IMG/VR virus record: IMGVR_UViG_3300035698_018317
Coordinates: 62,001 to 126,000 of that record
Direction: 5' to 3' (one strand)
Length of the DNA: 64,000 nucleotides
Every line of letters begins with the position of its first letter. Position 1 is the stretch's first letter. Positions 31,793-52,377 of the stretch are shown in pieces. Under the pieces are notes generated by a model. That model was not told the DNA's origin and did no database searches. It worked only from the letters and a program-made list of their open reading frames with translations. The position numbers were made by a program, and so were the translations under genes.

Positions 31793-32509
31793 ATGAAAGA
31801 CTTAGTGATAGGACTCTGTACCGTAAGTAATAGAAAAACAAGTTATCTTCAGGCAACACTGGATAGTTTGATAAATAATGCCAATAATAAAAACGGCATG
31901 GTAATAAGATTGCATCATTGTGATTTAAAAGGACAAGACGAACTTTGTGTTGGGTCCAATCAAGTTAAAATAGAAGATTTGTATGAAGATGAAATCAATT
32001 CAGGATTTTTGCAAATTATTCGAATAGACAACCACCCTGTGTTTGAAAACCTACCAAATAATTTTGGAGATAATGACACCAGAGTGTCTTGGAGAACAAA
32101 ACAGTGTTATGACTATAGTGAAGCATTTCGATTGAGTCATAATATCGGTAAGCATTACATGCATATTGAAGATGACTTAATTGCTTGCAAGGGTTACGAT
32201 TCGTACATCAGGAGCGAAATAGAAAAAGCAAATAATAATTGGGCGACTATATGGATGGCTCAAGGTGGGTTTATTGGCTGGTTATTCAGAAATAAAGACT
32301 TACCTAAAATGTCTAGCATGTTAAATGTTTTTAAGGAAGAAATGCCGTGTGATTGGATTGCTGAGTATTTTGCTATAATTATGCAGAGAACTGGATTACA
32401 AAATATCCATACAAACTACAGTATTTTTCAACATGTTGGAAGAGACAGAACATTACGAGATGGAAAAGATGATATTCAACCTGTAACTTTCACAAATTTT
32501 GTCGATTAA
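31793..32509 (+). CDS. MGAT4/GT54-like glycosyltransferase
   Basis: RKTSYLQATLDSL, WRTKQCYDY, YMHIEDDL, GFIGWLF...DL, PCDW, SIFQHVG. Confidence 0.75.
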   Translation: MKDLVIGLCTVSNRKTSYLQATLDSLINNANNKNGMVIRLHHCDLKGQDELCVGSNQVKIEDLYEDEINSGFLQIIRIDNHPVFENLPNNFGDNDTRVSWRTKQCYDYSEAFRLSHNIGKHYMHIEDDLIACKGYDSYIRSEIEKANNNWATIWMAQGGFIGWLFRNKDLPKMSSMLNVFKEEMPCDWIAEYFAIIMQRTGLQNIHTNYSIFQHVGRDRTLRDGKDDIQPVTFTNFVD

Positions 32510-33729: not shown

Positions 33730-34233
33730 TTATTTATTAGATTTAGGTTGTAAGGCGTAGTACATGCCACCTTTGGCATTACGGTCGGTTTTTAGAAGAC
33801 GATTGAGTTGGAGGGGGATTTTTAAAAATCTTCCTCTTTTATCTCTTTTCATATGCTTCGCCTCTTGTCTCATCACTTCTTTTGCAGACTCAGCCCACGG
33901 TGTTGATGACACAAACTTTTTTGGAAGAACATGATTTTGAGATGGGCATAATGATAAATCATTTTCCCTTACGTACATAGCCTTATTCATTAACCCACGT
34001 CTTACAAGCCATACTCCGATTGTCTTGTCTTGGCAGAAATACTTATATCCATCATCATTAACTGTATTTCCTGTATAACAATATTTATACCCAACAATTT
34101 GTCCTATGTAAGATTCGAAATCTTCCTCGCTGGAAGCTCTTACCATCTTTCGTTTTTGACTGATATATACGAAATCTACAACATTTCGTACTTCAACCCA
34201 GTCGCCAACTGTATATTTGTATTTCTTGGCCAT
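33730..34233 (-). CDS. Hypothetical protein
   Basis: ORF 33730..34275; probable start at 34233. Confidence 0.55.
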   Translation of the reverse strand: MAKKYKYTVGDWVEVRNVVDFVYISQKRKMVRASSEEDFESYIGQIVGYKYCYTGNTVNDDGYKYFCQDKTIGVWLVRRGLMNKAMYVRENDLSLCPSQNHVLPKKFVSSTPWAESAKEVMRQEAKHMKRDKRGRFLKIPLQLNRLLKTDRNAKGGMYYALQPKSNK

Positions 34234-34790
34234 TATTTCTTTTTCTTCAACGTAAGCTGTTTTATTGTATCGCAAAATCCATACTTCTTTGCTTCAGCAG
34301 CAGTCAACCACTCATCAGACGGGCCTAATAATTTTCCTATTTGTTTATCTGACATTTTAGTACACATTTTGTAGTGATTGTACATACGTTCTTCTATGAG
34401 GTCTTGTTCTTTTCTGGCAGCAATCAACTCATGTTGTTTGCCAGAAGCACCCCACGAATATTGGTGACTAAGTATTGATGTGTTCGGCGTAAGTACTCTA
34501 TGCTTTCCTGTCATAAAGATTAACAATCCTGCCGATGCTATTATTCCTATCCCTGATGTGACAACAGGAATGTTTGACCCAAGCATAATATCTGTCAGGG
34601 CAAACGCAGCCGTCACACTTCCTCCCGACGAATTTATTATAAGTTTAATTTCTTTTAATCTGGTTTTAGTAAAATCAAGATTCTTTTCGAGAATAAATGA
34701 TATAATATCTTTGCAAGAAGAGTCTGTTATATCCTCCATTAAAATATGAATCCCAACATCTCCTAAACGACTTGATGATTCTTTAGTCAT
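34233..34790 (-). CDS. clpP: ClpP-like protease subunit
   Basis: INSSGGSV, ASAG (Ser), SHQ (His), WLTAAEAKKYGFCD. Confidence 0.88.
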   Translation of the reverse strand: MTKESSSRLGDVGIHILMEDITDSSCKDIISFILEKNLDFTKTRLKEIKLIINSSGGSVTAAFALTDIMLGSNIPVVTSGIGIIASAGLLIFMTGKHRVLTPNTSILSHQYSWGASGKQHELIAARKEQDLIEERMYNHYKMCTKMSDKQIGKLLGPSDEWLTAAEAKKYGFCDTIKQLTLKKKK

Positions 34791-35611
34791 GCTTTCTTTA
34801 CCTTTGAAGTAGCGTATTTATTGTAGAGCTTTTTGCTGTACTTCCCAGATGATAGCATATCGGCAATGTATTTGTCAAATAAATCTGCAATGGGGATTTC
34901 TCCAGCACCAGCGGACTCGATACGTCCTATGGTGTTTTGGGCAGAAAAGGCTGTTAAATTTTTAAGTAAAACACAGCTTCTCTTATCATATCTTGAAGGA
35001 TTCATTAAGAATTTTTTCAATTGGAAAATATGAGCCAGAGATACACGAATAGATGATACTGGTCTTTCAGAATAAGCTGCATTAAGACTCAAATAATGGT
35101 GACCTGAATTATTAATGCATATGGAGCTTGCCGCTACAATAGCGGCATGTATATCCATTCCTTCGTCAACAAAGTGAGAAGTGATACGGACAAAATCTGG
35201 TTCTTCTTCTACGTCCCTTAAAGTACAAAGATAAACATATAACAAACTTGGAGCGATATTACATCGCAATAGGAATGTTTTCTTCAGATGCTCAAATTCT
35301 ACATAAGGAGGAAGTAATCTTCCGGCTTTAGCAATTTCTATCCAGTGTTTAACATCTTTGGACTTAATCACCTTGTTAACTCGTGGTTTATAACAAAGTC
35401 GATTTAGTTTCTTTTTATCTGCCTTGAATGCTCCCATTAACCCAGAGAAACAAACATTCTTAAGAGTAACTAGTCCTTTTTTCTTTTTGACATCATCAGG
35501 GATAGTCAAACCCCCAAGAGACCTGTTTCGTTCACGAAACAAGTGATATTCGACTTTGTAGTTAGAGGATTTGTGCTTACGTTTAAATACTGCTGCATTA
35601 TTCTTTAACAT
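34787..35611 (-). CDS. Hypothetical protein
   Basis: 274 aa ORF. Confidence 0.6.
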   Translation of the reverse strand: MLKNNAAVFKRKHKSSNYKVEYHLFRERNRSLGGLTIPDDVKKKKGLVTLKNVCFSGLMGAFKADKKKLNRLCYKPRVNKVIKSKDVKHWIEIAKAGRLLPPYVEFEHLKKTFLLRCNIAPSLLYVYLCTLRDVEEEPDFVRITSHFVDEGMDIHAAIVAASSICINNSGHHYLSLNAAYSERPVSSIRVSLAHIFQLKKFLMNPSRYDKRSCVLLKNLTAFSAQNTIGRIESAGAGEIPIADLFDKYIADMLSSGKYSKKLYNKYATSKVKKA

Positions 35612-35813
35612 AGGTTATTTCCACTCTCAAAAGTTCATTGAGTGGGCATTATATGCTGTAACACAGTTTAAAACAAGAAGACTGGGCGGCGTAGAAGAAT
35701 TTTTTCTCCAGAATGCTGCACTTGTTTGCTTATTTTTGCAGAAACAAGTTTGTGAAATACTGCCCACGACATCTTTTTTTCCCCGGCATTTTGCACTTGT
35801 TTACCCACTCTAA

Positions 35814-36047
35814 TTATTTCCACCAATCTCCCCCAAGTCCAAATTCTGTTGTTTCGTCTGTTTCATTTTCGCCTTCATCTACCAAAAATTCCTCATTATC
35901 ATACCCTAACGGATAAGCTTCATCTACTAGTGCATTTCCATTGTTGTTTTTGTTAAGATTTTCAACTATTTCTTTATCTAGCTTTTTTAACTTCCCCAAA
36001 AGAACTTGTCTTTGGGATATCAATTCGAATATTTTTTCATGATTCAT
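35814..36047 (-). CDS. Hypothetical protein
   Basis: 77 aa ORF. Confidence 0.5.
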   Translation of the reverse strand: MNHEKIFELISQRQVLLGKLKKLDKEIVENLNKNNNGNALVDEAYPLGYDNEEFLVDEGENETDETTEFGLGGDWWK

Positions 36048-36217
36048 ATTATTCTTCTTTCAAAGGTCTATTATAATGAAAAAATATATTAATTCAACTG
36101 TCTTTTACGCACTTTTTATACAATATCTTGACCGTAATAGATGAAAAACCATATTTACTGCAATCGGTAAGACGTAAAAGATTTTCAAGCAAAAATTTGA
36201 AGCGATACTAAATTGAC

Positions 36218-36246
36218 TTGCGAAAAAATGGTCAGTTTGGTAAATT
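36218..36246 (+). promoter_or_regulatory. Possible sigma70 promoter
   Basis: TTGCGA-17 nt-TAAATT. Confidence 0.35.
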
Positions 36247-36278
36247 CCTCATGTCGCATGTTTTGAGAGACTTTACGA

Positions 36279-36545
36279 ATGAATTATACATTATTAAGAG
36301 ATGAGTGGATAGGACCGGATGATGAGATTCTCGTCTCTTTCAACGTATATGATGAAGATTATGGGCTATTAGCATGGAGTAGCGATTATGTTGATATGAG
36401 CGAGGCTATTAGCGAATTTGATTTGAATGAAATCAGAAAAGAAATCATAGAACAGTGTAAGACGTTTAAACTTACTGTAGATTTATCCGCAAAGGCACCC
36501 ACAGAGTGGGGCGAAGAATGGGAAGAAGAAAGAGTGTTAACATGA
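36279..36545 (+). CDS. Hypothetical acidic protein
   Basis: 88 aa ORF. Confidence 0.55.
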   Translation: MNYTLLRDEWIGPDDEILVSFNVYDEDYGLLAWSSDYVDMSEAISEFDLNEIRKEIIEQCKTFKLTVDLSAKAPTEWGEEWEEERVLT

Positions 36546-37192
36546 AAAAAGTTTTAGTTGTAAGTGAACATGGGTATAGACAGTCCTCGTATTACAAACC
36601 TTTTGAAGAGTTTGGGGAATGCGAAATGGACGCATCAGTATTGACCACCAATCCAGATTCAGTTTGTCTAGCAGTCTTCGAGGGTGGAAGTGATGTTTCG
36701 CCTCATCTATATAATGAAGAAAAACATCATACAACATCTAACGACCCCCAACGTGACGTGTTTGAAAAAGCTGTTTTTCAGAGATTGCTTAAATTAGGAA
36801 TCCCTATGGCTGGGATATGTCGTGGGTCACAATTGCTATGCGTTTTGTCCGGTGGAAGATTAGTTCAAAATATTAATGGCCATCTAGGAAATCACAGAGT
36901 ACAAACCAGTGACGGTAGAACAATAATTGTTAGTTCAACTCACCACCAAATGCAACTGCCTCCTGTTGACGCAGAACCTCTTGCATGGGCCGAACCTAGA
37001 TTGTCTGATATGTATGAAGGATGGACTCCAACGGATGGTATATTCACGCCTGAGCGTGAATTTGATTGCGTGTATTATCCGAAAACTAATTGTCTTGGAA
37101 TGCAATATCACCCAGAATATATGTCTCGTGATTCAGAAGGATTCCAATATTGTGTTGAACTTACAAAGAAATACTTGTTTAAACAGAGTTAG
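36542..37192 (+). CDS. Class I glutamine amidotransferase (peptidase C26/PuuD-like)
   Basis: GGSDV, GICRGSQ, STHHQ, QYHPE. Confidence 0.88.
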   Translation: MKKVLVVSEHGYRQSSYYKPFEEFGECEMDASVLTTNPDSVCLAVFEGGSDVSPHLYNEEKHHTTSNDPQRDVFEKAVFQRLLKLGIPMAGICRGSQLLCVLSGGRLVQNINGHLGNHRVQTSDGRTIIVSSTHHQMQLPPVDAEPLAWAEPRLSDMYEGWTPTDGIFTPEREFDCVYYPKTNCLGMQYHPEYMSRDSEGFQYCVELTKKYLFKQS

Positions 37193-37430
37193 CTTGACGT
37201 TCCCGTTCCCTATTTGCCATGTCGTTCATGGTGCCGATGGCGTCTGCTCGTTCTTCAGGACCGTCACCGCCAGCATGATATGATTTGTCATCATTAAGTA
37301 CGCCGTTTTCTATCCATTGAACAATGTATTCATTCCATTCAGTGTCTTTTTTAATTTTGAGTAAAACATCGCCAATAACAATGCCTCCTCCAGCGACTTC
37401 CTCAATAACCCATTCCGAAAAACTTTTCAT
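37179..37430 (-). CDS. Small protein with CTS-like start (MKSFSEWVIEE)
   Basis: 83 aa ORF. Confidence 0.6.
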   Translation of the reverse strand: MKSFSEWVIEEVAGGGIVIGDVLLKIKKDTEWNEYIVQWIENGVLNDDKSYHAGGDGPEERADAIGTMNDMANRERERQANSV

Positions 37431-37432
37431 AT

Positions 37433-38482
37433 GTGACCTTTATTATGCAATCTAGAACGCCAAACAACACGCTATCACAAATATATATGTTTCTGAAGTC
37501 GATATTCATTGACCCCCTTTTCCAACGGCGGTATAATCCAGTTATGAGTAAATCACAAGACACCGAAAAACCATATTTTCTACCCAAGATAAAGGTTGCC
37601 CGACCTAATAACGGGTTATCAGATGGTAGTTTCGCATCAGTGACCAGTAAGGGTTCTGGCACTATAAACTACAATGATTTCATTCATTGTCGTGAAACTT
37701 TCCAAGGTCGCTCTATGGACAAAATGTTGTTTTCTCACTCTGACAAAGTAAGTAGCGAAACAATAGCTGAGTTTATACATCTTGTTGAACAGAGACTTAA
37801 TCACAAGAATATTACTCATATTGCACCAACAAACATAAATAAAATCACCTATATTGAGCCAGCCCAATTCTGGTTGTTCAAGCCGATGAGACAATCCTTG
37901 TTCACGGCATTGTTAAGAGCGGCTTGTAATTACACGGGAAACTTCGATAAGGCGTTGTATAGCATTAATTATCTCAATGGAACCAAAAAAGCTGTAAGTC
38001 ATTTCCTAGATGGAAATACTTGGTACAAAGGAAATTCAAGCGGTTGGTTCAACGCATTCCGAAATCAAAAGGACTTGACAACTGTGTTGGGCAAGAAGCC
38101 AATTCCGAAAGCAAAGTTTACAGAATTTGTCTTTAGTCTACTTGGCAAAGAGCCAGAAGCTATTAAGAAAAGTTTGGAAAAGAAGCCTATCACACAAGAA
38201 GACTTATTAGACCACGCATTAAGTTTGCTTAAAATGAAGCCTGATTCACTGACCACTGCATTGAAAAAAGCAAGAACTTCGGATGCAGTTATAGAAAGAG
38301 AAGCGCTTAAGGAATTAGGTAAAAATAAAAATGAGATAGAAAAAGATTATAGACGGCGTAACTTTACTCATTCTGCCAAGGCTCATGACGCAAAGAATAA
38401 AGAAAAAGCAAAGACAGAAGATAAAAAGAAGAAGCCCGCTAATCCAGAACGAAGAAGGCGAAGGACTTTAAGAACCAAATGA
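37433..38482 (+). CDS. Hypothetical protein; paralogue of 59144..59989 with a basic C-terminal extension
   Basis: FIHCRETFQ, EFIHLVEQRL, SLFTALLR. Confidence 0.6.
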   Translation: MTFIMQSRTPNNTLSQIYMFLKSIFIDPLFQRRYNPVMSKSQDTEKPYFLPKIKVARPNNGLSDGSFASVTSKGSGTINYNDFIHCRETFQGRSMDKMLFSHSDKVSSETIAEFIHLVEQRLNHKNITHIAPTNINKITYIEPAQFWLFKPMRQSLFTALLRAACNYTGNFDKALYSINYLNGTKKAVSHFLDGNTWYKGNSSGWFNAFRNQKDLTTVLGKKPIPKAKFTEFVFSLLGKEPEAIKKSLEKKPITQEDLLDHALSLLKMKPDSLTTALKKARTSDAVIEREALKELGKNKNEIEKDYRRRNFTHSAKAHDAKNKEKAKTEDKKKKPANPERRRRRTLRTK

Positions 38483-39564
38483 GAACTTTAGCAATAAAAA
38501 ATTCCAAACAGGGTAATGATTTTAATGTAGTTATATCTGATTCGGCTCTAGCTGAAATGGAAGAATACGTTAAAGTTAACCACCCAAAAACGACTGTCTA
38601 CATCATATATGACCAAATCTTAGGAGATAAGATAGACCTACTTCGGAAAGATACAGTTTTCATTCCTTACCCCAAGACAAGAAGCTACAGAGAATCGGCA
38701 GAAGAAATAAAAAATTGGAAAACAGCAACTCAATTGGTAAAGAATTTGTTTGAATATGGTATGAAAAAAAATGATGTGGTGATTGCTGTTGGTGGTGGGA
38801 CAGTTACCGACATGGCTGGATTTGTCTCTACGCTTGTTTATAGAGGGGTAAGTTGCATCTATTGTCCAACGACTATATCGTGCAGTATTGATGCGTGTAT
38901 CGGGGGAGAAACGGGAGTAAATTACGGCAAGAGAAAAAATGTTATTGGGACATTCCGAAATCCTAATGCTGTGTTCGTTGATTTAAATTTATTACAAAGT
39001 TTGTCCCATGAGGAAGTCCAAAGCGGACTTTGTACAAGCATAAAACATGCATTAATATGTGATGAAGGTTTTTTCCATTTTATACAAGAAAATTCCAATA
39101 ATATATATGAGAAAAACCACGAAACCTTAGAAGAATTGATTTATAAAAATCTGGAAATCAAAAGAACATTTGTCACATCAGATGGATTGTACAATAAAAA
39201 AATTGCTTTGGATTTAGGTCAACCTTTCTTTGATGCTTTGGTTAAACACTTTGAATATAATTATGAAGTCGCTTTAGCTATGGGATTAATAATAGTGTGT
39301 CGTGTTTCTAATAAACTCAATCTTCTTAGTGATGAAGATTTAGTTAAGATTGATGCATTACTATCATCTCATTTCAATCTTAGCATCGCAACTGGTAGAC
39401 CACCGAAAAGAGATGTAGATTACTTGATGAAATCAATACGTCGCCATAAAGAAGTAAATATAGTCCTTCCTGTTGCCATAGGTAACGTAGAGGTACATAC
39501 CGTTCCAATAAAATTATTGAACGAATCTTTAACTAGTGTATTCGTTGATGATGGCCGTTTCTAG
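38479..39564 (+). CDS. 3-dehydroquinate synthase (AroB)-like protein with degenerate active site
   Basis: GGGTVTD, PTT, D..IGG, KNVIGTF..P present; metal ligands are replaced. Confidence 0.85.
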   Translation: MRTLAIKNSKQGNDFNVVISDSALAEMEEYVKVNHPKTTVYIIYDQILGDKIDLLRKDTVFIPYPKTRSYRESAEEIKNWKTATQLVKNLFEYGMKKNDVVIAVGGGTVTDMAGFVSTLVYRGVSCIYCPTTISCSIDACIGGETGVNYGKRKNVIGTFRNPNAVFVDLNLLQSLSHEEVQSGLCTSIKHALICDEGFFHFIQENSNNIYEKNHETLEELIYKNLEIKRTFVTSDGLYNKKIALDLGQPFFDALVKHFEYNYEVALAMGLIIVCRVSNKLNLLSDEDLVKIDALLSSHFNLSIATGRPPKRDVDYLMKSIRRHKEVNIVLPVAIGNVEVHTVPIKLLNESLTSVFVDDGRF

Positions 39565-40485
39565 TAGAATTTTATACCATTGATAAGTAGATTGAAGCCC
39601 TTCTTTAAATGGAATCTTTGCTTTCCAGCCTGCTTCTGTAATTTTTGTTACATCAAGAAGTTTTCTCATAGTCCCATCAGGTTTAGAAGTATCTGTCACA
39701 ATTTCTCCTTTAAAACCTACAACTTCTTTTATTGCTTCGGCAATTTCTAATATGGATAAATCTTCTCCGGTTCCTACATTGATAATATCAGGCGAATCAT
39801 AATTGTTCATCAAAAACAGACAGGCATAAGCCAAATCGTCTACATGAAGCATTTCTCTTCTTGGAGTTCCGGTTCCCCACATCACAACTTGTTTGTCTCC
39901 ATTCATTTTGGCTTCATGAAATTTCCTCATTAAAGCTGGTAGTAGGTGAGATGTTTCTAAGTCAAAATTGTCATTCGGGCCAAACAAGTTGGTTGGCATC
40001 AAGCAAATGCCATTGAACCCATATTGCTTGGCATAAGATTGTATCATTTGGATACCAGCTATTTTAGCAATTGCATACGCATTGTTTGTAGACTCAAGTG
40101 GTCCAGTCAGAAGATAGTCTTCCTTAATGGGTTGTGGGCATTCTTTTGGGTAAATACAAGATGAACCTAAAAACATGAGCTTTTTGACGCCATTACGATA
40201 TGCTGAATCAATAACGTTTGTTTGAATCATTAAATTATCGTATATGAAATCAGCAGGGCATGTAGAATTTGCAACAATTCCCCCTACCGTTGCTGCTGAC
40301 AAGAAAATATATTCCGGCTTACTTTCTTTAAACCATTTATCTACTTCATCACGGTTTCTCAAATCTACTTCTAATCTTGTTTTTACTTCGATGTTCGCAT
40401 ATCCATTCAGATATAGTTTTGTTACTATGGCTGACCCTACCAACCCCTTATGACCTAAAACAATTATTTTACTTTCTTTTTTCAT
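39529..40485 (-). CDS. fcl: GDP-L-fucose synthase
   Basis: GHKGLVGSA, LGSSCIYPK, YAIAK, PTNLFGPNDNF, GTGTPRRE. Confidence 0.95.
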   Translation of the reverse strand: MKKESKIIVLGHKGLVGSAIVTKLYLNGYANIEVKTRLEVDLRNRDEVDKWFKESKPEYIFLSAATVGGIVANSTCPADFIYDNLMIQTNVIDSAYRNGVKKLMFLGSSCIYPKECPQPIKEDYLLTGPLESTNNAYAIAKIAGIQMIQSYAKQYGFNGICLMPTNLFGPNDNFDLETSHLLPALMRKFHEAKMNGDKQVVMWGTGTPRREMLHVDDLAYACLFLMNNYDSPDIINVGTGEDLSILEIAEAIKEVVGFKGEIVTDTSKPDGTMRKLLDVTKITEAGWKAKIPFKEGLQSTYQWYKILLETAIINEYTS

Positions 40486-40486
40486 T

Positions 40487-41557
40487 TTATCTTATCCTAT
40501 AATCTAAGTTTGGCCGACAATCATACTTCATCATATCATCAATAATCATGTCAAAATCAAATTCGGGTTTCCAACCAATTTTTTTTATTTTAGAAGGATT
40601 TCCAAGAAGAACATCTACCTCTGACGGTCGGAAATACTTTTTATCTACTTTTACAACTACATTCCCAGCGTATACGCCTACTTCATCTATACCAGAACCA
40701 CTCCATTCTAAGGGCATTCCCATCCAGTCAAAACATTTTTTTACGAATTCTCTTACAGTATGTGTTTCTCCTGTGGCTACAACATAATCATCTGGTTCAT
40801 CTTGTTGTAAAATAAGCCATTGTGATTTAACATAATCCCTAGCATGTCCCCAATCTCTATAGGCATCCATATTCCCCAGTCTAAGAGGTTCTACAAACTG
40901 AAACTTTCTTTCTTTAAGTAATGATAAATTTTCGCCACACCATCTTGTTATTTTTTTTGTTACAAAAGTTTCTCCTCTGCGAGAGGATTCATGGTTGAAT
41001 AAGATTCCATTGCAAGCAAAAGAACCATAAGCTTCACGATAGTTCTTTGTAATCCAATATGCGTATAACTTAGCAGCCCCATACGGAGAACGAGGATGGA
41101 AATCATTATTTTCATCATATCCATTTTCAGGCATTTCGCTACGCCGTCCCCCAAACATCTCTGATGTAGATGCTTGGTAGAATTTAGAATTAGGGCAATT
41201 CTGGTACATAGCATCTAACAATCTAAGACATCCAATAGCGTCTACATCGGCTGTATATTCTGGAACTTCAAAAGATACCTTTACATGACTTTGAGCGGCC
41301 AGATTATAGATTTCTTTTGGCTTGATTTTAGAAATTAAAGCTGTGAGATTACTAGAATCTGTCATGTCCCCATGATGAATAAATAATTTTTTTCCATATA
41401 TCTTGTCATCTGACATGAGATGTTCTATCCGTTCCGTAGTAAAAACAGAACTTCTACGCATGATTCCATGCACTTCATATCCTTTATCTAACAAGAATTC
41501 TGCTAGATAGCTTCCATCTTGACCTGTAATGCCAGTAATAATAGCTTTCTTATTCAT
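40487..41557 (-). CDS. gmd: GDP-mannose 4,6-dehydratase
   Basis: [45 protein letters not shown]. Confidence 0.97.
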
Positions 41558-42200
41558 ACTTTACATGAGTATAGGGTGATATTATTTTGAAAAATACTTG
41601 GGATGAATCAGGATTAATCATAATTCTAAAACGACCTCTATCTGTCGTAATTCTTGTGGAAAAATTAAGACCTATTCGGAAGAATTTTTCTATTGTGTTG
41701 GTTCCTTTTTCTCCCCATACGTGCGTGTTTAGAATAATTTCTTTGTTATGATAACGACCCGAATCCATATACCATATTGCCATAGATAAATCATACATTG
41801 TATCTAATATGGTAGATTTAATATGTCTCACACCGTCTTTGTAAAACATCTTCCTATATTCATCAAAAATTGGATAACAAAGAGAGTGCCATCTGTTGGT
41901 GTTCTTTGATGATGTAAATGGATTGTCAGAAGATAAAACATTAAGTTCAGATGCCTTATGTTCAATCCATTTTATATTGTTACTTCGCATTGTTAAATAA
42001 CAATTTCTTCCTTTAGGAGGCTTTACAATAGAAGAACCTCCTAAAATAGTCCCTATTATTATCCTATTTTGTCTTTTTGATATTGTTGGGTTTATCGTGT
42101 GCATCGTTTTATATACGCAATTGGTATAATTTTCTACCAGTTGCATGTTAAAATTAATTTGATAAAAATAGATAAGGTTGAAGTACAATTTAGTACACAA
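41550..42200 (-). CDS. LAGLIDADG_2-type homing endonuclease-like protein, probably inactive
   Basis: [12 protein letters not shown] and [11 protein letters not shown]; the true start may be 42146 or 42104. Confidence 0.75.
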
Positions 42201-42229
42201 ACTTAATTAAAAATTAAAAGGAGAAAATT

Positions 42230-42562
42230 ATGGGAGCAACAACTGGTAATCAAGGAGCTGGACATGGTTCGGCAATGGGCGCAGGCGTTAAAGGTCCGGG
42301 TAATGGAAGAAATATTTTTGTTCCGTTGGTAGCACCGCATATCGTAGCCGCTGGCGTAGTAGCCCTAGTTGGTGGAACTATAAACGTTTCGTTGGCTGGT
42401 TTGACGGGTGGAGCAGAGCTTTATTCGGTACAGGCACAGGGACCAAATGCTGTAACAGTTACAGTAAAGACAGAAACGGATGACGTTCTGACTTCAATTA
42501 CACTGGTAGGAACTGGTACTGACAGCGTAGACTACGTTGTAACAACCGTAGGCATTCAGTAA
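42230..42562 (+). CDS. Putative structural protein; paralogue of 29670..30059
   Basis: MGATTGNQGAGHGSA...KGPGNGR; SD AGGAGA. Confidence 0.6.
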   Translation: MGATTGNQGAGHGSAMGAGVKGPGNGRNIFVPLVAPHIVAAGVVALVGGTINVSLAGLTGGAELYSVQAQGPNAVTVTVKTETDDVLTSITLVGTGTDSVDYVVTTVGIQ

Positions 42563-42583
42563 TCTCGACGGATTAATACTAGC

Positions 42584-42620
42584 AAGAACCCTCCGCAATT
42601 TATTTTGCGGGGGGTTTTTT
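42584..42620 (+). terminator. Rho-independent terminator
   Basis: ACCCTCCGCAA/TTGCGGGGGGT stem followed by a T-run. Confidence 0.85.
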
Positions 42621-42622
42621 AT

Positions 42623-43141
42623 TTAAAGAATAATTTTATTATCCCTCATTGTATCTGTTAATTTAAGTAGATGTTTACACATCCCCGGCATTTCTTGTGG
42701 GTTCGCAGTTCCGGGCCTCATTAAAGCCTCATACGCAGCCCTTTTACGGCCATATAATGAATTATCTACATGGTCATAGTAATTGAATCTCCAATAAAAA
42801 TCTTTACAGTTGCATCTTAAAATAACATCAGTATCCATAGACAGTGGCTCAAAGAAATGTTCACTGCCATCTTCAGTTATTTTGATTAAATTGGGTTCTT
42901 CATTTTCATGGTATTGAACATTTTTGAAAACGATTATTGGAGAATATTCTTTTCCTTCATTCTGGGCGAGTCCCTTAACAAATAATGTTCTCATCCCAAG
43001 AAATGGCCTCCATGTTATATTAGCTATATTTATAGTATCTGTAGCGTACTGTCTCTTTGTGGTATTTGGAAAGGCATCCACCGTACTTTGAAACAGTTCA
43101 GAAAGAGAAGACTCTGTAATTATCCAACTTTTAAAGTCCAT
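42623..43141 (-). CDS. SWIM-like zinc-finger protein with CTS-like start
   Basis: CNCKDF...CKH; starts MDFKSWIITE. Confidence 0.65.
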   Translation of the reverse strand: MDFKSWIITESSLSELFQSTVDAFPNTTKRQYATDTINIANITWRPFLGMRTLFVKGLAQNEGKEYSPIIVFKNVQYHENEEPNLIKITEDGSEHFFEPLSMDTDVILRCNCKDFYWRFNYYDHVDNSLYGRKRAAYEALMRPGTANPQEMPGMCKHLLKLTDTMRDNKIIL

Positions 43142-43169
43142 ACAATAATATCAATCATATTTAATAGTT

Positions 43170-44260
<1,091 letters not shown>

Positions 44261-44549
44261 ATCAGTCCTAGTTTGTTGATACCCCTTCCCCATATCAGAG
44301 AACGAATTTCTTATTTTACCTGCTATGTTTCCTATAGCGGAGCCAATTCCTTCAATAATTTCTTGTTCAATGAGTGCAACTTTTATCTTATCTTCTCTAT
44401 CATCTAATTTGGATATAATGTTTTCCGACATTTCTCCAATGATATCAAGTGGGTTTATACCTAATTCAGCTATGTTATAAGCTAACTGTTCTAATTGGGC
44501 ATTAGCATTATTGTTCTCGTTATATTCTAAAAATGTTCTCATTTTTCCT

Positions 44550-44810
44550 TTAAAATGTAGGCACTAATTCTGGCAATGTTACGCTTAAAACATTGACATT
44601 AGCATCGCCAATTCTATCGTCTGTATTAGCCTGTATAGCTAAACAAGTTTCTCTGGTGACGGTATCAAAACTAAGAATCACCCAATCATCATCGTCCATG
44701 TCTGTAAAGAACTCTCTTGTTGTGCTTCCTACTGGCAACATAGCCATAAAGGTAGCTTTAGAAATAGTTCCTGTATTAGCACATCCTCTTTTTTTTAATT
44801 GTCGAACCAT
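44550..44810 (-). CDS. Hypothetical protein
   Basis: 86 aa; CTATATA-N7-ATG upstream. Confidence 0.55.
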   Translation of the reverse strand: MVRQLKKRGCANTGTISKATFMAMLPVGSTTREFFTDMDDDDWVILSFDTVTRETCLAIQANTDDRIGDANVNVLSVTLPELVPTF

Positions 44811-45053
44811 TTACTATTATATAGACGAAAAGGATTAATTCCAAAAGGAGAAATCTTGATAAATGAAGATTGTTACTGGTTTTTAGATAAAGCTGAAAGC
44901 ATAATGAAGGCACTATGCGTGGAGTGCCAACAAATAGAGAAAACTGGCTGGTTTTGGAAAGGCAGCGAGTTTGGTTATGGTGATTACCACTTAGAATGTT
45001 CTAAGTGTGGAAAGATTCTACATGAAAGTAAAAAAAATGAGACCTCCGTTTAA
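44799..45053 (+). CDS. Small Zn-ribbon protein
   Basis: CVEC and CSKC pairs; start uncertain. Confidence 0.5.
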   Translation: MSNHLLLYRRKGLIPKGEILINEDCYWFLDKAESIMKALCVECQQIEKTGWFWKGSEFGYGDYHLECSKCGKILHESKKNETSV

Positions 45054-45831
45054 AACACATGGTGGAAAGTTCTATCTTGCCTCTTGGATTATAGAGAACT
45101 TCCCAGAAAATCATGAACAATATGATTATATCGAACCTTTCATGGGCGGTGGAAGCGTATTCTTAAATAAAACTCCCTCTATAGGATTGAAAGTCATAAA
45201 TGACATTGATTTGGGAACAATTCAAGTATTCAGAGCATTAAGAGATGAACCTAAAACGTTCATTGCAAAATTGAAAAGAAAAAAATACTCTGAAAATGTA
45301 TTCAAAAGGGAATTAAAAAAGACGGAATTTAAAGATTATTTAGACCATGCAATAAACGAATTTGTATTAAGAAGAATGAGTCGTGGTGGTCTTAAAACAG
45401 CCTTCGCTTGGTCGGAAAGACTACGAGGTGGTGAGCCGGGAGATTTACATGCTTGGAAAACTATTGTTAAGCAATTACCTGAAATAGCCAAGAAGATAAA
45501 AAACATATACATATTTAATAAAGATGCTTGTAAGATTATAGAAGCGTTTAATTCTAAGAATGCCTTAGTTTATTGTGACCCTCCTTATGTTCCAGAAACA
45601 AGAGTAAGCCCTTCTGCATATGGAGCAAACGAAATGAGCACAGATGACCATATTAAACTTTCTCAAAAACTGATGAGGTTTGAAGGCAAAGTGGTTATAA
45701 GTGGATATTCGGGTATTTTGTATAATAGACTTTATGAAGAATGGAGACGAATTGAAAAAGAAGTGCCGAATCATTCTTCTCAACAAAAGACCAAACCACG
45801 TAAAATAGAAGTTTGTTGGATGAACTACTAA
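45037..45831 (+). CDS. dam: DNA adenine methyltransferase (Dam/D12 class)
   Basis: GGKFYLA, YIEPFMGGGSV, NDID, YCDPPY. Confidence 0.9.
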   Translation: MRPPFKTHGGKFYLASWIIENFPENHEQYDYIEPFMGGGSVFLNKTPSIGLKVINDIDLGTIQVFRALRDEPKTFIAKLKRKKYSENVFKRELKKTEFKDYLDHAINEFVLRRMSRGGLKTAFAWSERLRGGEPGDLHAWKTIVKQLPEIAKKIKNIYIFNKDACKIIEAFNSKNALVYCDPPYVPETRVSPSAYGANEMSTDDHIKLSQKLMRFEGKVVISGYSGILYNRLYEEWRRIEKEVPNHSSQQKTKPRKIEVCWMNY

Positions 45832-45850
45832 CCAACAAACTATATATTAT

Positions 45851-46039
45851 GTGAAAAGTTTTAAAAAATGGCTAGAAGATACAGGTCAAGCATGGCCTGC
45901 AACAAATGATGAACCATATGCTATGGCTGGTGTTCAGAGCAGGATTGTGAGTAACGATGCTGTAAAGGCAAAGCCTCAAGGGTTAGCTGCTAAGCTATTT
46001 GGTAAAAAGAAGAAGAGAAAAAAACATGAGAACATTTAG
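45851..46039 (+). CDS. Small basic protein with CTS-like start (MKSFKKWLED; GTG start)
   Basis: 62 aa; CTATATA 4 nt upstream. Confidence 0.6.
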   Translation: MKSFKKWLEDTGQAWPATNDEPYAMAGVQSRIVSNDAVKAKPQGLAAKLFGKKKKRKKHENI

Positions 46040-46370
46040 CGAATACATGGATACCGCAAAAAGTCTTTTCGGGGATAATAAAGACACACAAGCAAAAGCC
46101 GTCATACGTTCAGGTATCAATTTAAGACCTGATTTTTGGGACGATTTTATGAGTATTACAAATGATTCAGAAGGTGTTTCTCAATTATTAGATGTTCCAA
46201 AAGAAAAAGTTTCTAATTGGGCTTCTCTCGTAAAAGATGCATTGGAAGATGTACAAGCAACAGATAATGAAGAAAAAGGTGGACGTTCAGAAATCTTGGG
46301 GACTGGCGAAGATATTGAAGACCCCAAAGGACACCCGGACCACATGGATGATTTGAGACCTACACCTTAA
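46026..46370 (+). CDS. Protein with CTS-like start (MRTFSEYMD)
   Basis: ORF 45999..46370; probable ATG at 46026. Confidence 0.6.
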   Translation: MRTFSEYMDTAKSLFGDNKDTQAKAVIRSGINLRPDFWDDFMSITNDSEGVSQLLDVPKEKVSNWASLVKDALEDVQATDNEEKGGRSEILGTGEDIEDPKGHPDHMDDLRPTP

Positions 46371-47068
46371 TCCCAGCCCAAAATTTTACGTAAAACATCA
46401 TCCGGTTGAAACACGGGATTTTTATACTTTTCAATATATTTCAATTGTGCATCAACATTGTGCCCACTCTTTATTACCTTCTGCTTATACCCTTCTTTAT
46501 TTGTTATTTTAGTTGGCATACTTGGGTGATAACCCTCTCTATAGCCATCCCTGAAGAACGTTATACCTGTAACAAATAGTTCGGTAATCTTAAAAGTCAT
46601 TAAATAATCAATTGCTAACACACCAGTGTTGGCCGTACTACCACCTATGCTGTGTGTTATTTGTTTATGAATGTTTAAAGGAATATAAACTACTTCAAAT
46701 TCAGTATTAATTTCCTCTAGTGCCTTAACACGTTTTTGAACAGCCCCCGTACTTGCGGGATGCCATGTAATCAAATATTTAAGCCCTAATTCCTTAGCTG
46801 GTATCCAAATAGTATCATAAACTTCTTTTAATCTGTCTGTATATCCTTTTTGTTTAGAATGTTTATTTAAATAATCTTCAGCCAACCCTGTTACTAATGC
46901 GTCGGTGTGATGTCCAACATCTTCATAATTATCTTCACTTATTGGCAATGCGCTATTCATACGAATAACTTTATCATAATTATCTATAAGTTGTCCCGAA
47001 CCCTTCAGCGAAGGGGAGGGGCCAACCAACACAACACGTTTATCATATAAATCTTTAACTATACTCAT
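46367..47068 (-). CDS. GT29 (sialyltransferase-like) glycosyltransferase
   Basis: Sialylmotif-L-like VVLVGPSPSLKGSGQLIDNYDKVIRMN; S-like ANTGVLAI; probable start at 47068. Confidence 0.7.
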   Translation of the reverse strand: MSIVKDLYDKRVVLVGPSPSLKGSGQLIDNYDKVIRMNSALPISEDNYEDVGHHTDALVTGLAEDYLNKHSKQKGYTDRLKEVYDTIWIPAKELGLKYLITWHPASTGAVQKRVKALEEINTEFEVVYIPLNIHKQITHSIGGSTANTGVLAIDYLMTFKITELFVTGITFFRDGYREGYHPSMPTKITNKEGYKQKVIKSGHNVDAQLKYIEKYKNPVFQPDDVLRKILGWD

Positions 47069-47598
47069 TTCCAAACCCCAATGTATAAAGCATGGTCTCC
47101 TTGACTTCCTTCTGAATAGATATGGACATCGGTTAATTCTGCGTATTCTTCCAGCTTTTTTTTCCACCATGGTTGATTATGTGCTGAAGGATGTAATGTC
47201 TCATCATCAACTCTATAACAAGTCTCCTTTTTGAAACAAACTGTAACAAAAAGCCTACAACTTACACGTTTCATTTCTATTAGAGATGCATCAACTAAAT
47301 GTGCATCTAAGTGTTCTAAACAATCAAAAGAAGTTAATACGTCAAACTCTTTCTCATCAAATGGTAAATTATCAGCGGAAGCTTTAACATCAGCCGATGG
47401 ACATGCTATATCAACACCTATTCTTTTTGAAACGTCTAAACCTTTAATAAATTCGTTATGGCCACATCCAATGTCAACTACAGATGAAGCATCTAACTCT
47501 TTGAATAAACACATATGGTCTCGGCTATGATTGTCATGCCCATACTGTCCATACTTGTTTTGATTATTGTAAATGTATTCGTAATGTTCTTTGGTCAT
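47065..47598 (-). CDS. Class I SAM-dependent methyltransferase
   Basis: VVDIGCG, FDCLEHL. Confidence 0.85.
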   Translation of the reverse strand: MTKEHYEYIYNNQNKYGQYGHDNHSRDHMCLFKELDASSVVDIGCGHNEFIKGLDVSKRIGVDIACPSADVKASADNLPFDEKEFDVLTSFDCLEHLDAHLVDASLIEMKRVSCRLFVTVCFKKETCYRVDDETLHPSAHNQPWWKKKLEEYAELTDVHIYSEGSQGDHALYIGVWK

Positions 47599-47601
47599 TT
47601 T

Positions 47602-48284
47602 TTAAACTCCTGTAGCAATAATTACATATCCTTCTTTATCGTCTTTTCCATATGATAAAAGACCTTTTCCAACCGAATCTGTAAAGTTAAGGCCCATTTG
47701 AGCTGCTAATATACCTATTACTGATTGGTCATGACGGTGCCCAAGTACTCTTGAATCCTTACTGCACGAGCCTTTATCATTCTTCCAAGGGCCACTAAAA
47801 ACTTCTTTGTTTTTACTATAATCTAACCATTTATCAAAACATTCGGTGCAAATAGGATTAGTAAAATCAAAGCCCATTACATTAGCCATGGCATGAGGCA
47901 TTTTAAATGCCTCTTCTCTACTTACTCCCATGATTTCTAAACATCTATCAGTAGTCCAATCACCACTTGTCCATCCATTCAATTGTATATAATATCCCTG
48001 TTTTTCTATTATATCCCAATGTGCGTCTAAACTCTTCTTGACATAACATCCGGCATCAATCCACAACACTTGGTCATAACCCTGCTTACGGGCTAAATCA
48101 ATGACATATGGTTTAAATGCATAATTTATTTCTTGGTGTGTTGGACATCCATCTGGGTATTTAGTATAAAATTTAACATCACCATTGTAATGGTCTAATA
48201 CACTCTTTTTTAATTTTTTTGAAGCATTTAGATATCTTTTGCTATTAGAATTATTATCAAACTAACTACTATTCTTTTTTTCAT
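47602..48284 (-). CDS. GT-A-like glycosyltransferase with an apparent -1 frameshift near 48260
   Basis: ATG at 48284 reads MKKRIVVS and then stops; the alternative frame is open from about 48259 through PTHQEINYAFKPY..LWIDAG..RHDQS; paralogue of 48294..49037. Confidence 0.7.
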
Positions 48285-48293
48285 AGTTCTCTC

Positions 48294-49037
48294 CTAACCG
48301 CCATTAGCTAAAAATATAATATCTTTGTATTCTGTGTCCATGCCGGGACGCCAATACAAAACATCACATATCTCGTTTTCTTTTCTTTTCCCTTTTAATC
48401 CTGTATTGACATGTCTCCAATTGGTTGCTCCTAATTGATGAGCAATTAAAGATACAGGTGCTTGCTGTCTATGCCCCAGTACTCTCTTGTCGCTACTTGC
48501 CTCACAGTTATTATTATGTCTTATTCTGTTATCTCCATCTCCTGATGCTTCTGGGCACTGCCATGTGTACCTCCAATCCCAAATTCTATCAAATAAATCA
48601 ATACCAATTTGAGAAGTTAAATCTAAACCAAAGCATCCGCCTGAAATACTGGGTATATCGAACAAAGAGTTACGGTCCTCTATACCCATTATTTCTAAAG
48701 CCTTATCCGATGTCCATTGACCCACATTCCAATCGTCATTATCTATAAAATAATATCCTTGTTTGTCTATAATATCAAATATAGGTCGGACATTGTTTAT
48801 GGCCCATAGAGACGAGTCGATATACAATAATTTCTCATATCCTTTGTCTAATAATTCTTTGAAAATATATATCTTAAAACCTAAGTGAAGTTCGTTATGT
48901 GTTGGGCCACCATAAGTCTCAGGAGTTACTGGCTGATAATCACCGTCCCAATACTTTTTGATGCTTTCTTTTTGTCGTTCTAAACATCTGTAATATCTTG
49001 GACTATCTGCATAACTAAATATTATTTCTTTACTCAT
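48294..49037 (-). CDS. GT-A-like glycosyltransferase
   Basis: PTH...GFK.Y, LYIDSS, GQWTSD, DKRVLGHR. Confidence 0.7.
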   Translation of the reverse strand: MSKEIIFSYADSPRYYRCLERQKESIKKYWDGDYQPVTPETYGGPTHNELHLGFKIYIFKELLDKGYEKLLYIDSSLWAINNVRPIFDIIDKQGYYFIDNDDWNVGQWTSDKALEIMGIEDRNSLFDIPSISGGCFGLDLTSQIGIDLFDRIWDWRYTWQCPEASGDGDNRIRHNNNCEASSDKRVLGHRQQAPVSLIAHQLGATNWRHVNTGLKGKRKENEICDVLYWRPGMDTEYKDIIFLANGG

Positions 49038-49624
49038 CGTGTTAATATAATATTTTCAGCACTTTGATATACATTCTTATATCCAAGAGGTTCTAGCCTC
49101 TTCTCTATATCTTTAGCTCTATTATCATGTTCTACAATTATTAGAGAACACTTATCCAACTTATCCCAAGGGAACATACAAAACAATTCGTAGCTATACC
49201 CCTCTACATCAACATCAATGAAATCAAAATCATTCCCATATGTTTCTAATAATTGATTTACTGTTATTGAAGGAATGGAAATTTTTTGCCAATCGACACC
49301 ACCTGCCATCGTAGACCATTTATCTCGATGTGCCGTATCACTAGTTGAGATGGCATCTCCCTGTGAATCATAAAAATCAAGAATACCGCCTTCAGGTGTT
49401 ATGGCTGCACATAATAAATCAACATTAGGCTTCCTAACATTTTTCATCAAATTAACAAAGTTAATAGGACTGGCTTCTATTTCTAACCCAGACCATCCTA
49501 GCTCAACTAATGCAAAAGTATTTGAGAAGGTCTTTCCATCATAGGCACCTATGTCTAAAAACTTCCCTTTACGATTTTTAAAATGTTCTAATATAAATTT
49601 TTCTTCATTGTTTTGCGAATACAT
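49034..49624 (-). CDS. FkbM-family methyltransferase
   Basis: YSQNNEE, FLDIGAYDG..SNT, DVDVEG. Confidence 0.85.
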   Translation of the reverse strand: MYSQNNEEKFILEHFKNRKGKFLDIGAYDGKTFSNTFALVELGWSGLEIEASPINFVNLMKNVRKPNVDLLCAAITPEGGILDFYDSQGDAISTSDTAHRDKWSTMAGGVDWQKISIPSITVNQLLETYGNDFDFIDVDVEGYSYELFCMFPWDKLDKCSLIIVEHDNRAKDIEKRLEPLGYKNVYQSAENIILTR

Positions 49625-49674
49625 TTAACGCCTTTCTATATGGTTTTCCAATTATTCATTGGGGGTATTTTTTA

Positions 49675-50871: not shown

Positions 50872-50877
50872 AGTAAC

Positions 50878-51411
50878 CTATTTTCTATATATATAGTAGT
50901 AAATAGGCTCTGTTATAAATTCTTCTTTTTTCAACAAAGGATAAACGCCATCAGAAAAATCACGGTCTTCGCCATGATTTTTCTTCGGAAAGCCAACTTT
51001 TAACGCCAATTCTCTTTTAATCGGGTTTAAGTGATTGGGGCTTCTATAAAAGATTCCATTCTTTTCAAACCAGCCTTTATATTCAATAGAGTGTATGAAA
51101 GTTCGAGGGGATTCTCCATTGGTGGTCATGACTCCATTTATACCCACGCAATCTGGCCCAGATTTTATAGCATTTAATATGTTCGATATATAATTTGGTG
51201 ATACCAAATCATCATCATCTACAAAAGAAACATAATCACCAATAGCTTGTCTAAGAAGTTCGTTTCTTTTTGTGCCTATATCTTTTTCCCCATTATCTAT
51301 ATTGAACAATATTTCTATATCGGGCTGTCTTTGTTGTTCCAGAACGTCTAAAAGTCTATCGGCTACCTGCCACCTATTCTCCAAAGACACAATTAAAATT
51401 GATAATTTCAA
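50878..51411 (-). CDS. GT2 glycosyltransferase
   Basis: IGTKRN, FVDDDD, HGED. Confidence 0.85.
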   Translation of the reverse strand: MKLSILIVSLENRWQVADRLLDVLEQQRQPDIEILFNIDNGEKDIGTKRNELLRQAIGDYVSFVDDDDLVSPNYISNILNAIKSGPDCVGINGVMTTNGESPRTFIHSIEYKGWFEKNGIFYRSPNHLNPIKRELALKVGFPKKNHGEDRDFSDGVYPLLKKEEFITEPIYYYIYRK

Positions 51412-51420
51412 GGATAACTC

Positions 51421-52347: not shown

Positions 52348-52377
52348 AATATAATTCTATTCACTAATTTATCTAGT

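What the first reader, a model, noticed from the sequence alone, without database searches (positions are those of the whole stretch)
38479..39564. Full-length AroB-like pseudoenzyme: NAD-binding half kept, metal and substrate residues lost
Seen versus canonical DHQS: GGG..D, PTT, D and KN are retained, but GGKT becomes GGET, GLAEVIK becomes GLCTSIK, LNLGHT.GH becomes LDLGQP.FD, and LHGEAV becomes YEVAL, so all three Zn/Co ligands are gone while the ORF is intact over 361 aa. Inference: repurposed as an NAD(H) sensor or sponge, or as a dominant-negative partner of host AroB, rather than a shikimate-pathway metabolic gene. It would be mis-annotated as aroB.
Basis: partly seen in the sequence, partly recalled or inferred. 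Interest (0 to 1): 0.65.

Follow-up and report, generated by a model that had tools for sequence, protein, structure and literature searches.

The report
Catalytically degenerate AroB-fold protein in huge phage
A huge aquatic phage carries an intact, selected copy of the shikimate enzyme 3-dehydroquinate synthase that keeps its NAD-binding half but has lost every residue needed for the enzyme's chemistry, and it always travels with a phage-only partner gene, so it is a repurposed protein rather than a metabolic aroB.

Summary
ORF 38479-39564 (+) is an intact 361-aa DHQS-fold protein (AF2 pLDDT 92, TM 0.87 to solved DHQS). Seven positions that are 100% invariant in 214 diverse DHQS representatives (motif-mapped to K152, E194, R264, N268, H271, H275, H287 of A. 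nidulans DHQS) are all replaced, while the NAD-binding motifs are kept. It is below NCBIfam's aroB cut-off (194 vs 305 bits), yet JGI names its relatives 3-dehydroquinate synthase. The window is part of a 225-kb fragment of a T4-like huge phage found in salt-lake metagenomes. Only four lineages of this clade exist among 1.84 billion representatives. In them the three metal-ligand positions drift, but K152E, R264K and H275D are fixed. The gene is not decaying: dN/dS is 0.27-0.5, significantly below 1 but 3-8 times higher than in the neighbouring GDP-fucose genes. In every lineage it lies directly downstream of, and here overlaps (ATGA), a phage-only orphan gene behind a conserved sigma-70-like promoter. 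Best reading: a non-catalytic (for DHQS chemistry), probably NAD(H)-binding protein that works with that partner. A rebuilt active site with new chemistry is the main rival. Dominant-negative action on host AroB and NAD sponging are unlikely or untested. The function remains unproven.

The parts
38479..39564 (+). DHQS-fold protein (P0001, 361 aa). NAD-binding motifs are kept; the metal ligands and phosphate-binding residues are lost.
37544..38482 (+). Phage-only orphan partner gene (312 aa from ATG 37544; the longer GTG frame from 37433 is probably not translated). It has a core domain with an invariant CRE motif (CRETF in most copies) and R.S..T..LRA, a helical C-terminal extension and a basic tail. 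Its stop overlaps the DHQS-like start (ATGA).
   Evidence: It lies directly upstream of the DHQS-like gene in all lineages.
37509..37537 (+). Sigma-70-like promoter TTGACC-17-TATAAT (11 of 12), ending 6 nt before ATG 37544. It is conserved at DNA level in all related loci.
   Evidence: scan; 89% mean identity over the stretch aligned across the start codon, -35 invariant. Consensus match only; not shown to be functional.
37179..37430 (-). Small conserved opposite-strand gene (83 aa) that separates the pair from the upstream glutamine amidotransferase.
   Evidence: (69% identity to the L002 counterpart)
36506..37192 (+). Class I glutamine amidotransferase (Peptidase_C26-like) with Cys nucleophile and HPE motifs present. 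A conserved neighbour, but a separate transcription unit.
39529..40485 (-). GDP-fucose synthase-like SDR epimerase/reductase. It is convergent, and its 3' end overlaps the DHQS-like 3' end by 36 nt. It is the first gene of a glycan-biosynthesis island.
40487..41557 (-). GDP-mannose 4,6-dehydratase
   Evidence: 4e-129

Best explanation
A cellular aroB captured by an ancestor of this huge-phage lineage has lost DHQS chemistry and survives as a DHQS-fold protein that most likely still binds NAD(H) or a related ADP-containing ligand. It is made from a two-gene transcription unit with a phage-specific orphan protein (37544-38482). It most likely acts with or on that partner as a ligand-binding, non-catalytic subunit or regulator, not in the shikimate pathway. 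Shown: the fold, the loss of catalytic residues, the retained NAD motifs, purifying but relaxed selection, and the conserved gene pair and promoter-like element. Inferred: NAD(H) binding, physical or functional coupling with the partner, and a regulatory or sensing role.
For: Fold: AF2 pLDDT 92.4, pTM 0.92; Foldseek TM 0.86-0.87 over the full length to DHQS 6lla and 3okf. Loss: seven positions invariant in 214 of 214 canonical sequences are all replaced. Within the clade the three metal-ligand columns read T/E/D/L, Q/H/K/N and Y/R/H/Y, so they drift without constraint, and the DKK loop is also variable. Retention: E75, K78, GGG 105-107, D111, PTT 130-132, D138, K153-N154 and F159 are kept. Selection: the ORF is intact in window, L002, L005, L012, L013, L015, L016 and L018. 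NG86 dN/dS is 0.27 for the close pair (dS 0.106) and 0.31-0.51 for distant pairs, and omega>=1 is rejected (p from 2e-5 to 1e-11). The neighbours score 0.035-0.15 (GFS, GMD) and 0.11-0.25 (partner). Coupling: the partner lies immediately upstream in all four lineages, with an ATGA overlap or a 0-24 nt gap. A conserved promoter-like element lies upstream. The 595-kb relative LR756511.1 (MCP 78% identical) lacks both genes. Distribution: an exhaustive HMM search finds the clade as one 50% cluster plus a fragment, then a drop from 643 to 187 bits.
Against: No direct evidence of NAD(H) binding. The complex prediction with the partner gave no verdict, so binding is unproven. Three replacements are fixed rather than drifting (K152E, R264K, H275D), four cysteines are clade-invariant (C129, C135, C140, C185), and D146, K197 and K250 equivalents are retained. 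These fit a rebuilt, still-functional pocket as well as they fit a dead one. Stand-alone homologues of the partner's core domain occur without any DHQS-like gene. No RNA data were found.
Confidence: 0.42

Rival explanations
1. Neofunctionalised enzyme. The pocket was rebuilt (phosphate-binding K and H turned into E and D, new cysteines) for a different, non-phosphorylated or cationic substrate. It still uses NAD+ for transient or net oxidation, without the ancestral metal site, and may feed the adjacent glycan-biosynthesis island.
For: K152E, H275D and R264K are fixed in all lineages, and four Cys that are rare at those columns in canonical DHQS (0-12 of 214) are invariant. D146, K197 and K250 equivalents are retained. 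The gene abuts a 15-kb island with GMD, a GFS-like gene, GT2 and GT29-like transferases and methyltransferases. DHQS-like genes have been drawn in phage DNA-hypermodification clusters next to epimerases and glycosyltransferases (PMC8256090, Fig. 2 legend).
Against: No member of the DHQS, sugar-phosphate-cyclase, Fe-ADH or glycerol dehydrogenase group is known to me to work without the metal (my knowledge). The ligand columns vary among lineages instead of settling on a new set. The protein evolves several-fold faster than the true enzymes beside it. It is transcribed apart from and convergent to the island. No DAHP/Kdo8P synthase, CMP-sugar synthetase, NeuB or TET was found in the 225-kb fragment, which is only 44% of the genome.
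Confidence: 0.25
2. Anti-defence binder. The retained dinucleotide pocket sequesters NAD+ or an NAD-derived immune signal.
For: NAD-binding motifs are retained. Evolution is fast relative to the neighbours, as expected for host-interaction genes. The gene has a moron-like layout with its own promoter-like element.
Against: No similarity to any known sponge. NAD+ is too abundant to be buffered stoichiometrically (my knowledge). No PHROG hit was found. PADLOC was not scanned, so nothing here tests the idea directly.
Confidence: 0.1
3. Dominant-negative subunit that poisons the host AroB dimer.
For: DHQS is an obligate homodimer, and an arginine from the other subunit (R130 equivalent) contributes to the site (my knowledge). 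That position is R or K in the clade.
Against: At most about 32% identity to any cellular DHQS. The clade members differ by about 50% from each other, which does not fit tracking of a conserved host interface. The conserved coupling is to a phage protein. No benefit to the phage is apparent.
Confidence: 0.04
4. Decaying relic of a captured aroB with no function.
For: It is the highest-dN/dS and least conserved gene of the neighbourhood (50-53% aa identity against 86-94% for GFS and GMD).
Against: The ORF is intact in all eight loci across four lineages. dN/dS is significantly below 1, even in the close pair (p = 2e-5). 125 of 361 positions are invariant. Promoter and gene order are conserved. 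There are no indels in four environmental samples.
Confidence: 0.04

Closest known systems
3-dehydroquinate synthase (AroB; Pfam PF01761 + PF24621; TIGR01357)
   Same: The same two-domain fold over the full length (TM 0.86-0.87). The same NAD-binding motifs (E..K, GGG..D, PTT, D, KN). The same length.
   Different: All three metal ligands and the phosphate-binding K152, N268, H275 and DKK loop are replaced. The score is below the aroB equivalog cut-off. It is encoded by a phage fragment in which the one shikimate-pathway family searched for (DAHP synthase/KdsA) was not found.
Other sugar phosphate cyclases (2-deoxy-scyllo-inosose synthase BtrC, EEVS, DDGS) and TIGR04425 AroB-related phospholyase
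   Same: The fold. DOIS is among the hits (2d2x 1.9e-25; TM 0.84). In butirosin biosynthesis BtrC pairs with a GATase-like subunit (my knowledge), which recalls the nearby GATase here.
   Different: These enzymes keep the metal and phosphate sites (my knowledge). TIGR04425 scores 172 against a cut-off of 400. The GATase here is a separate transcription unit.
Dehydrogenase-fold pseudoenzymes used as NAD(H) sensors or regulatory subunits (for example NmrA; 'prozyme'-type dead paralogs, PMC5201418; reviews PMC10211241, PMC5106787)
   Same: A catalytic site lost with the nucleotide pocket kept. Purifying selection with a raised rate. A suggested partner-dependent role.
   Different: A different fold family. 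No DHQS-derived pseudoenzyme turned up in my literature searches. Here the partner is an unrelated orphan, not an active paralog.
DHQS-like genes in phage TET/glycosyltransferase DNA-hypermodification contigs (PMC8256090)
   Same: A phage-encoded DHQS-like gene near sugar-nucleotide enzymes.
   Different: That paper only colours the gene in a figure and assigns no function. No TET/JBP was found in this 225-kb fragment, though the control genomes did not ring either. Relatedness to this clade was not tested.

Membership tests
3-dehydroquinate synthase (AroB, EC 4.2.3.4) | DHQS two-domain fold (Rossmann-like N-domain plus helical C-domain) | tested here: met
   Pfam PF01761 6.8e-35 and PF24621 6.3e-13. 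AF2 pLDDT 92.4. Foldseek TM 0.86-0.87, E 1.5e-26 to 6lla.
3-dehydroquinate synthase (AroB, EC 4.2.3.4) | Score above the curated equivalog cut-off (TIGR01357, 305 bits) | tested here: not met
   194.4 bits
3-dehydroquinate synthase (AroB, EC 4.2.3.4) | Three divalent-metal ligands (Glu194, His271, His287 equivalents) | tested here: not met
   T186, Q248 and Y262 in the window protein. These columns are E, H and H in 214 of 214 canonical sequences. No clade member has all three.
3-dehydroquinate synthase (AroB, EC 4.2.3.4) | Phosphate-binding residues (K152, N268, H275, K356 loop equivalents) | tested here: not met
   E144, D245 and D252, and the DKK loop reads HKE. All are at least 99% conserved in canonical sequences.
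3-dehydroquinate synthase (AroB, EC 4.2.3.4) | NAD+-binding motifs | tested here: met
   E75, K78, G105-G107, D111, P130-T132, D138, K153-N154 and F159 are present. Binding itself was not measured.
3-dehydroquinate synthase (AroB, EC 4.2.3.4) | Conversion of DAHP to 3-dehydroquinate; aroB complementation | not testable with these tools
   Needs an enzyme assay or genetics.
Sugar phosphate cyclase superfamily (DOIS, EEVS, DDGS, EVS) and TIGR04425 | Metal site plus sugar-phosphate binding pocket shared with DHQS | tested here: not met
   The same columns are lost. TIGR04425 scores 172.3 against a cut-off of 400.
Pseudoenzyme (operational definition: a homolog that lacks conserved catalytic motifs but is under selection) | Loss of catalytic residues | tested here: met
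Pseudoenzyme (operational definition: a homolog that lacks conserved catalytic motifs but is under selection) | Maintained by purifying selection in several lineages | tested here: met
   dN/dS 0.27-0.51, omega>=1 rejected, and the ORF is intact in eight loci.
Pseudoenzyme (operational definition: a homolog that lacks conserved catalytic motifs but is under selection) | Absence of any catalytic activity | not testable with these tools
   The fixed E144, D252 and K241 and the four invariant Cys leave a new activity possible.

The most novel reading that the evidence does not exclude
The DHQS scaffold has been rebuilt in a huge-phage lineage into a metal-independent, NAD-linked protein with a charge-reversed, cysteine-lined pocket. 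It would be either a new enzyme chemistry or a thiol/NAD(H) redox switch, and it would control a phage-only partner protein. That would make it the first functional offshoot of the DHQS family outside sugar-phosphate cyclisation.
Probability: 0.2. Interest if true: 0.75.

Novelty: new variant of a known kind. Interest (0 to 1): 0.45.

Why it matters
Automatic pipelines call this gene 3-dehydroquinate synthase, so virome surveys would count it as a shikimate-pathway auxiliary metabolic gene, which it cannot be. It is a clean, testable case of a virus keeping an enzyme fold for its nucleotide pocket after discarding the chemistry. I found no description of a DHQS-derived pseudoenzyme. If the pocket proves to be rebuilt and not dead, it would extend a mechanistically famous enzyme family to new chemistry or to ligand sensing, and it would give a first functional handle on an orphan phage domain family.

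Tried and rejected
1. Partner identification. There was no Pfam, PHROG or PDB sequence hit. Atlas look-alikes were all below 0.8 and the Atlas's own model is poor. The AF2 model has mean pLDDT 58.8, with only the core reasonably modelled. Foldseek against the PDB found nothing at E<=0.001, and VIA-align wide gave a best Z of 4.5, which is background level. So no fold or function could be assigned. A profile word search found only eight hypothetical proteins.

2. Complex prediction of the DHQS-like protein with the partner gave no verdict (ipSAE 0.00). It counts neither for nor against binding.

3. The search for related loci in IMG/VR with the clade profile found 114 pattern matches, none confirmed.

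4. The tblastn search of INPHARED phages found only canonical aroB-like hits at 25-33% identity, mostly in host-derived or unannotated records.

5. Shikimate, ulosonic-acid and hypermodification context. No DAHP/Kdo8P synthase, CTP_transf_3, NeuB or Tet_JBP was found in the 225-kb fragment. The fragment is about 44% of the genome, and the Tet_JBP control rang nowhere, so absence is weak evidence.

6. The idea that the GATase is in the same operon is rejected. A conserved opposite-strand gene and a promoter-like element lie between them.

7. The long GTG start at 37433 for the partner is rejected. The apparent amino-acid conservation upstream of M38 coincides with the -35 and -10 hexamers.

8. 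Expression. No RNA run holds the region.

9. Literature. No paper on a metal-less or inactive DHQS homolog was found.

Full report
**Observation**

The ORF at 38479-39564 (+) is open from ATG to TAA and encodes 361 aa. The opposite strand is closed.
- Pfam finds both halves of 3-dehydroquinate synthase: PF01761 at 6.8e-35 and PF24621 at 6.3e-13.
- NCBIfam's aroB equivalog model gives 194 bits against a cut-off of 305.
- The best solved relatives are bacterial DHQS at E 1e-36 to 1e-24.

To measure how unusual this is, I aligned the protein with 214 canonical DHQS-family representatives taken from the two database searches.
- The columns of E144, T186, K241, D245, Q248, D252 and Y262 are K, E, R, N, H, H and H in 214 of 214 canonical sequences.
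- By motif position these correspond to K152, E194, R264, N268, H271, H275 and H287 of A. nidulans DHQS. This numbering comes from my knowledge of the Carpenter et al. 1998 structure and was not verified by a tool.
- They are the three metal ligands plus phosphate and carboxylate binders.
- The NAD-side residues are kept: E75, K78, GGG, D111, PTT, D138, KN and F159.

Contigs of four salt-lake metagenome runs lie on the region with one SNP and no indels.

**Where it sits**

The window is bases 62001-126000 of a 225-kb viral record that CheckV rates 44% complete.
- It encodes a T4-type portal with an intein, a terminase and a gp23 major capsid protein.
- The capsid protein is 78% identical to that of a 595-kb uncultured huge phage, LR756511.1. 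This is therefore a huge phage, from saline waters.
- Downstream of the gene, on the other strand, begins a glycan island. It holds a GDP-fucose-synthase-like SDR, GDP-mannose 4,6-dehydratase, a LAGLIDADG endonuclease, a GT29-like transferase, FkbM and other methyltransferases, and two GT2s.
- Upstream lie a class I glutamine amidotransferase, a small conserved opposite-strand gene, and then an orphan gene whose stop overlaps the DHQS-like start as ATGA.

**Relatives**

The word search found only three close relatives (46-51% identity), all from aquatic metagenomes. After them comes a gap to ordinary DHQS at 32% identity or less. The exhaustive HMM search of 1.84 billion representatives confirms this: one 50% cluster plus a fragment, then a fall from 643 to 187 bits into about 19,800 canonical hits. 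There are no intermediates.

In all four lineages the gene order is the same: GATase, small antisense gene, orphan, DHQS-like, then the convergent GFS-like gene, GMD and LAGLIDADG. LR756511.1 lacks both the orphan and the DHQS-like gene.

**Pattern of loss**

Within the clade the metal-ligand columns differ from lineage to lineage: T/E/D/L, Q/H/K/N and Y/R/H/Y. No member has all three ligands. That is the signature of a site that is no longer under constraint.

One search lists 47 positions conserved at 90% or more in canonical sequences:
- 21 are kept in all four lineages.
- 4 are replaced by one fixed residue (A117S, K144E, R241K, H252D in P0001 numbering).
- 22 vary.

By my tally of that list by domain, positions kept in at least three lineages number 22 of 27 in the N-domain but 8 of 20 in the C-domain. 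This agrees with 'NAD half kept, catalytic half lost'.

Three things do not fit a simply dead pocket:
- two phosphate-binding basic residues are fixed as acids (E144, D252);
- D138, K189 and K228 are still invariant, and K241 is a conservative R-to-K change;
- four cysteines (C129, C135, C140, C185) are invariant in the clade but rare at those columns elsewhere (0-12 of 214).

**Selection**

Nei-Gojobori estimates on codon alignments from eight loci:

| Gene | dN/dS | aa identity, window vs relatives |
|---|---|---|
| DHQS-like | 0.27 (close pair, dS 0.106); 0.31-0.51 (distant pairs) | 50-53% |
| Partner | 0.11-0.25 | 61-74% |
| GFS-like | 0.035-0.13 | 86-88% |
| GMD | 0.075-0.155 | 86-94% |

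A binomial test rejects omega>=1 for the DHQS-like gene (p from 2e-5 to 1e-11). No sub-region stands out. The gene is therefore maintained by selection, but several-fold less tightly than the true enzymes beside it.

**Structure**

AF2 with a 70-sequence alignment gives pLDDT 92.4 and pTM 0.92. Foldseek matches DHQS structures over the full length at TM 0.86-0.87. The fold is intact, including the C-domain.

**The partner**

The orphan (312 aa from ATG 37544) has no Pfam, PHROG or PDB match.
- Its model is good only in the core, and that core has no convincing structural neighbour.
- The apparent protein conservation upstream of M38 is really a conserved DNA element. It is TTGACC-17-TATAAT at 37509-37537, ending 6 nt before the ATG, within an alignment of 89% mean identity across six loci.
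- The pair thus looks like its own transcription unit, possibly leaderless. This is inferred from consensus only.
- The partner's core domain belongs to a tiny phage-only family. One tandem paralog lies elsewhere in the same genome. Stand-alone members occur in unrelated phage contexts. The copies next to a DHQS-like gene carry the full-length helical C-terminal extension with a basic tail.
- The complex prediction returned no verdict. I do not use it either way.

**Interpretation**

It is close to certain that this is not a 3-dehydroquinate synthase, nor any sugar-phosphate cyclase, and that it is functional in some way. I think it most likely (about 0.4) that it is a non-catalytic, NAD(H)-type ligand-binding protein that acts together with its co-transcribed partner.

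The main rival (about 0.25) is a rebuilt pocket with new chemistry. The fixed acidic replacements, the cysteines and the neighbouring glycan genes suggest it. A DHQS-like gene drawn in phage hypermodification clusters (PMC8256090) shows that such genes do appear in phage sugar and DNA-modification settings, but no function was assigned there.

A sponge or anti-defence role is possible but untested. Dominant-negative action on host AroB is unlikely given the low identity to cellular enzymes and the fast divergence within the clade. A functionless relic is largely excluded.

**Novelty and score**

My literature searches found no DHQS-derived pseudoenzyme or metal-less DHQS homolog. I rate it a new variant of a known kind, of moderate interest. 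The case is clean and testable and corrects a likely mis-annotation, but the clade is small and its role is unknown.

Noticed in passing
window 19805-22306 (+): The T4-type portal (gp20) gene carries an intein. A Pfam Intein_splicing domain lies at residues 154-332, ahead of the Portal_T4 domain.
   Followed up: no
window 41550-42200 (-); also L002 9460-10017, L013 13130-13684, L016 10185-10739: A LAGLIDADG homing endonuclease gene sits directly after GDP-mannose dehydratase. It is kept at that spot in all related lineages, which is unusual stability for a homing endonuclease.
   Followed up: partly
window 37470-37560: The non-coding stretch upstream of the partner gene is more conserved (89% DNA identity over six loci) than the coding regions. 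It holds a near-consensus sigma-70 promoter that ends 6 nt before the ATG, which suggests a leaderless mRNA, plus an invariant AAATATATATG element further upstream.
   Followed up: partly
window 31793-32509 and 39529-54700: A large glycan-biosynthesis island: MGAT4-like, GFS-like, GMD, GT29 (sialyltransferase-like), FkbM and other methyltransferases, and two GT2 genes. Relatives add a sulfotransferase (L002 10534-11160). The target of glycosylation is unknown.
   Followed up: partly
G000:C1:201251-202291 (-), locus L020 844-2082: A 412-aa protein made of two tandem copies of the partner's core domain (34-35% identity), with no Pfam match. It defines a small phage-only domain family with an invariant CRE motif (CRETF in most copies) and R.S..T..LRA.
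   Followed up: partly
window 38479-39564, residues C129, C135, C140, C185: Four cysteines are invariant in the phage clade but present at those alignment columns in only 5, 1, 12 and 0 of 214 canonical DHQS sequences. Three lie in the active-site segments. Whether they cluster in space could not be checked, because no coordinates were available.
   Followed up: partly
window 34233-34790 (-), 55323-56267 (+), 60053-61006 (+), 10196-13165 (-): Other notable genes: a ClpP-like protease, an S8 subtilase, a phiEco32-like COOH-NH2 ligase, and a 989-aa purple-acid-phosphatase/metallophosphatase fused to a LamG domain. Relatives also carry a caspase-like Peptidase_C14.
   Followed up: no
window 39529-39564: The 3' ends of the DHQS-like gene and the convergent GFS-like gene overlap by 36 nt (24 nt in L013/L016). 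No terminator-like hairpin was found in 35500-40000.
   Followed up: no
window 27183-28622 vs LR756511.1: The closest capsid protein in GenBank phages (78% identity) belongs to a 595-kb uncultured huge phage. This fits CheckV's 44% completeness for the 225-kb record. That phage lacks both genes of the pair and has only a 38%-identical GFS-like gene.
   Followed up: yes
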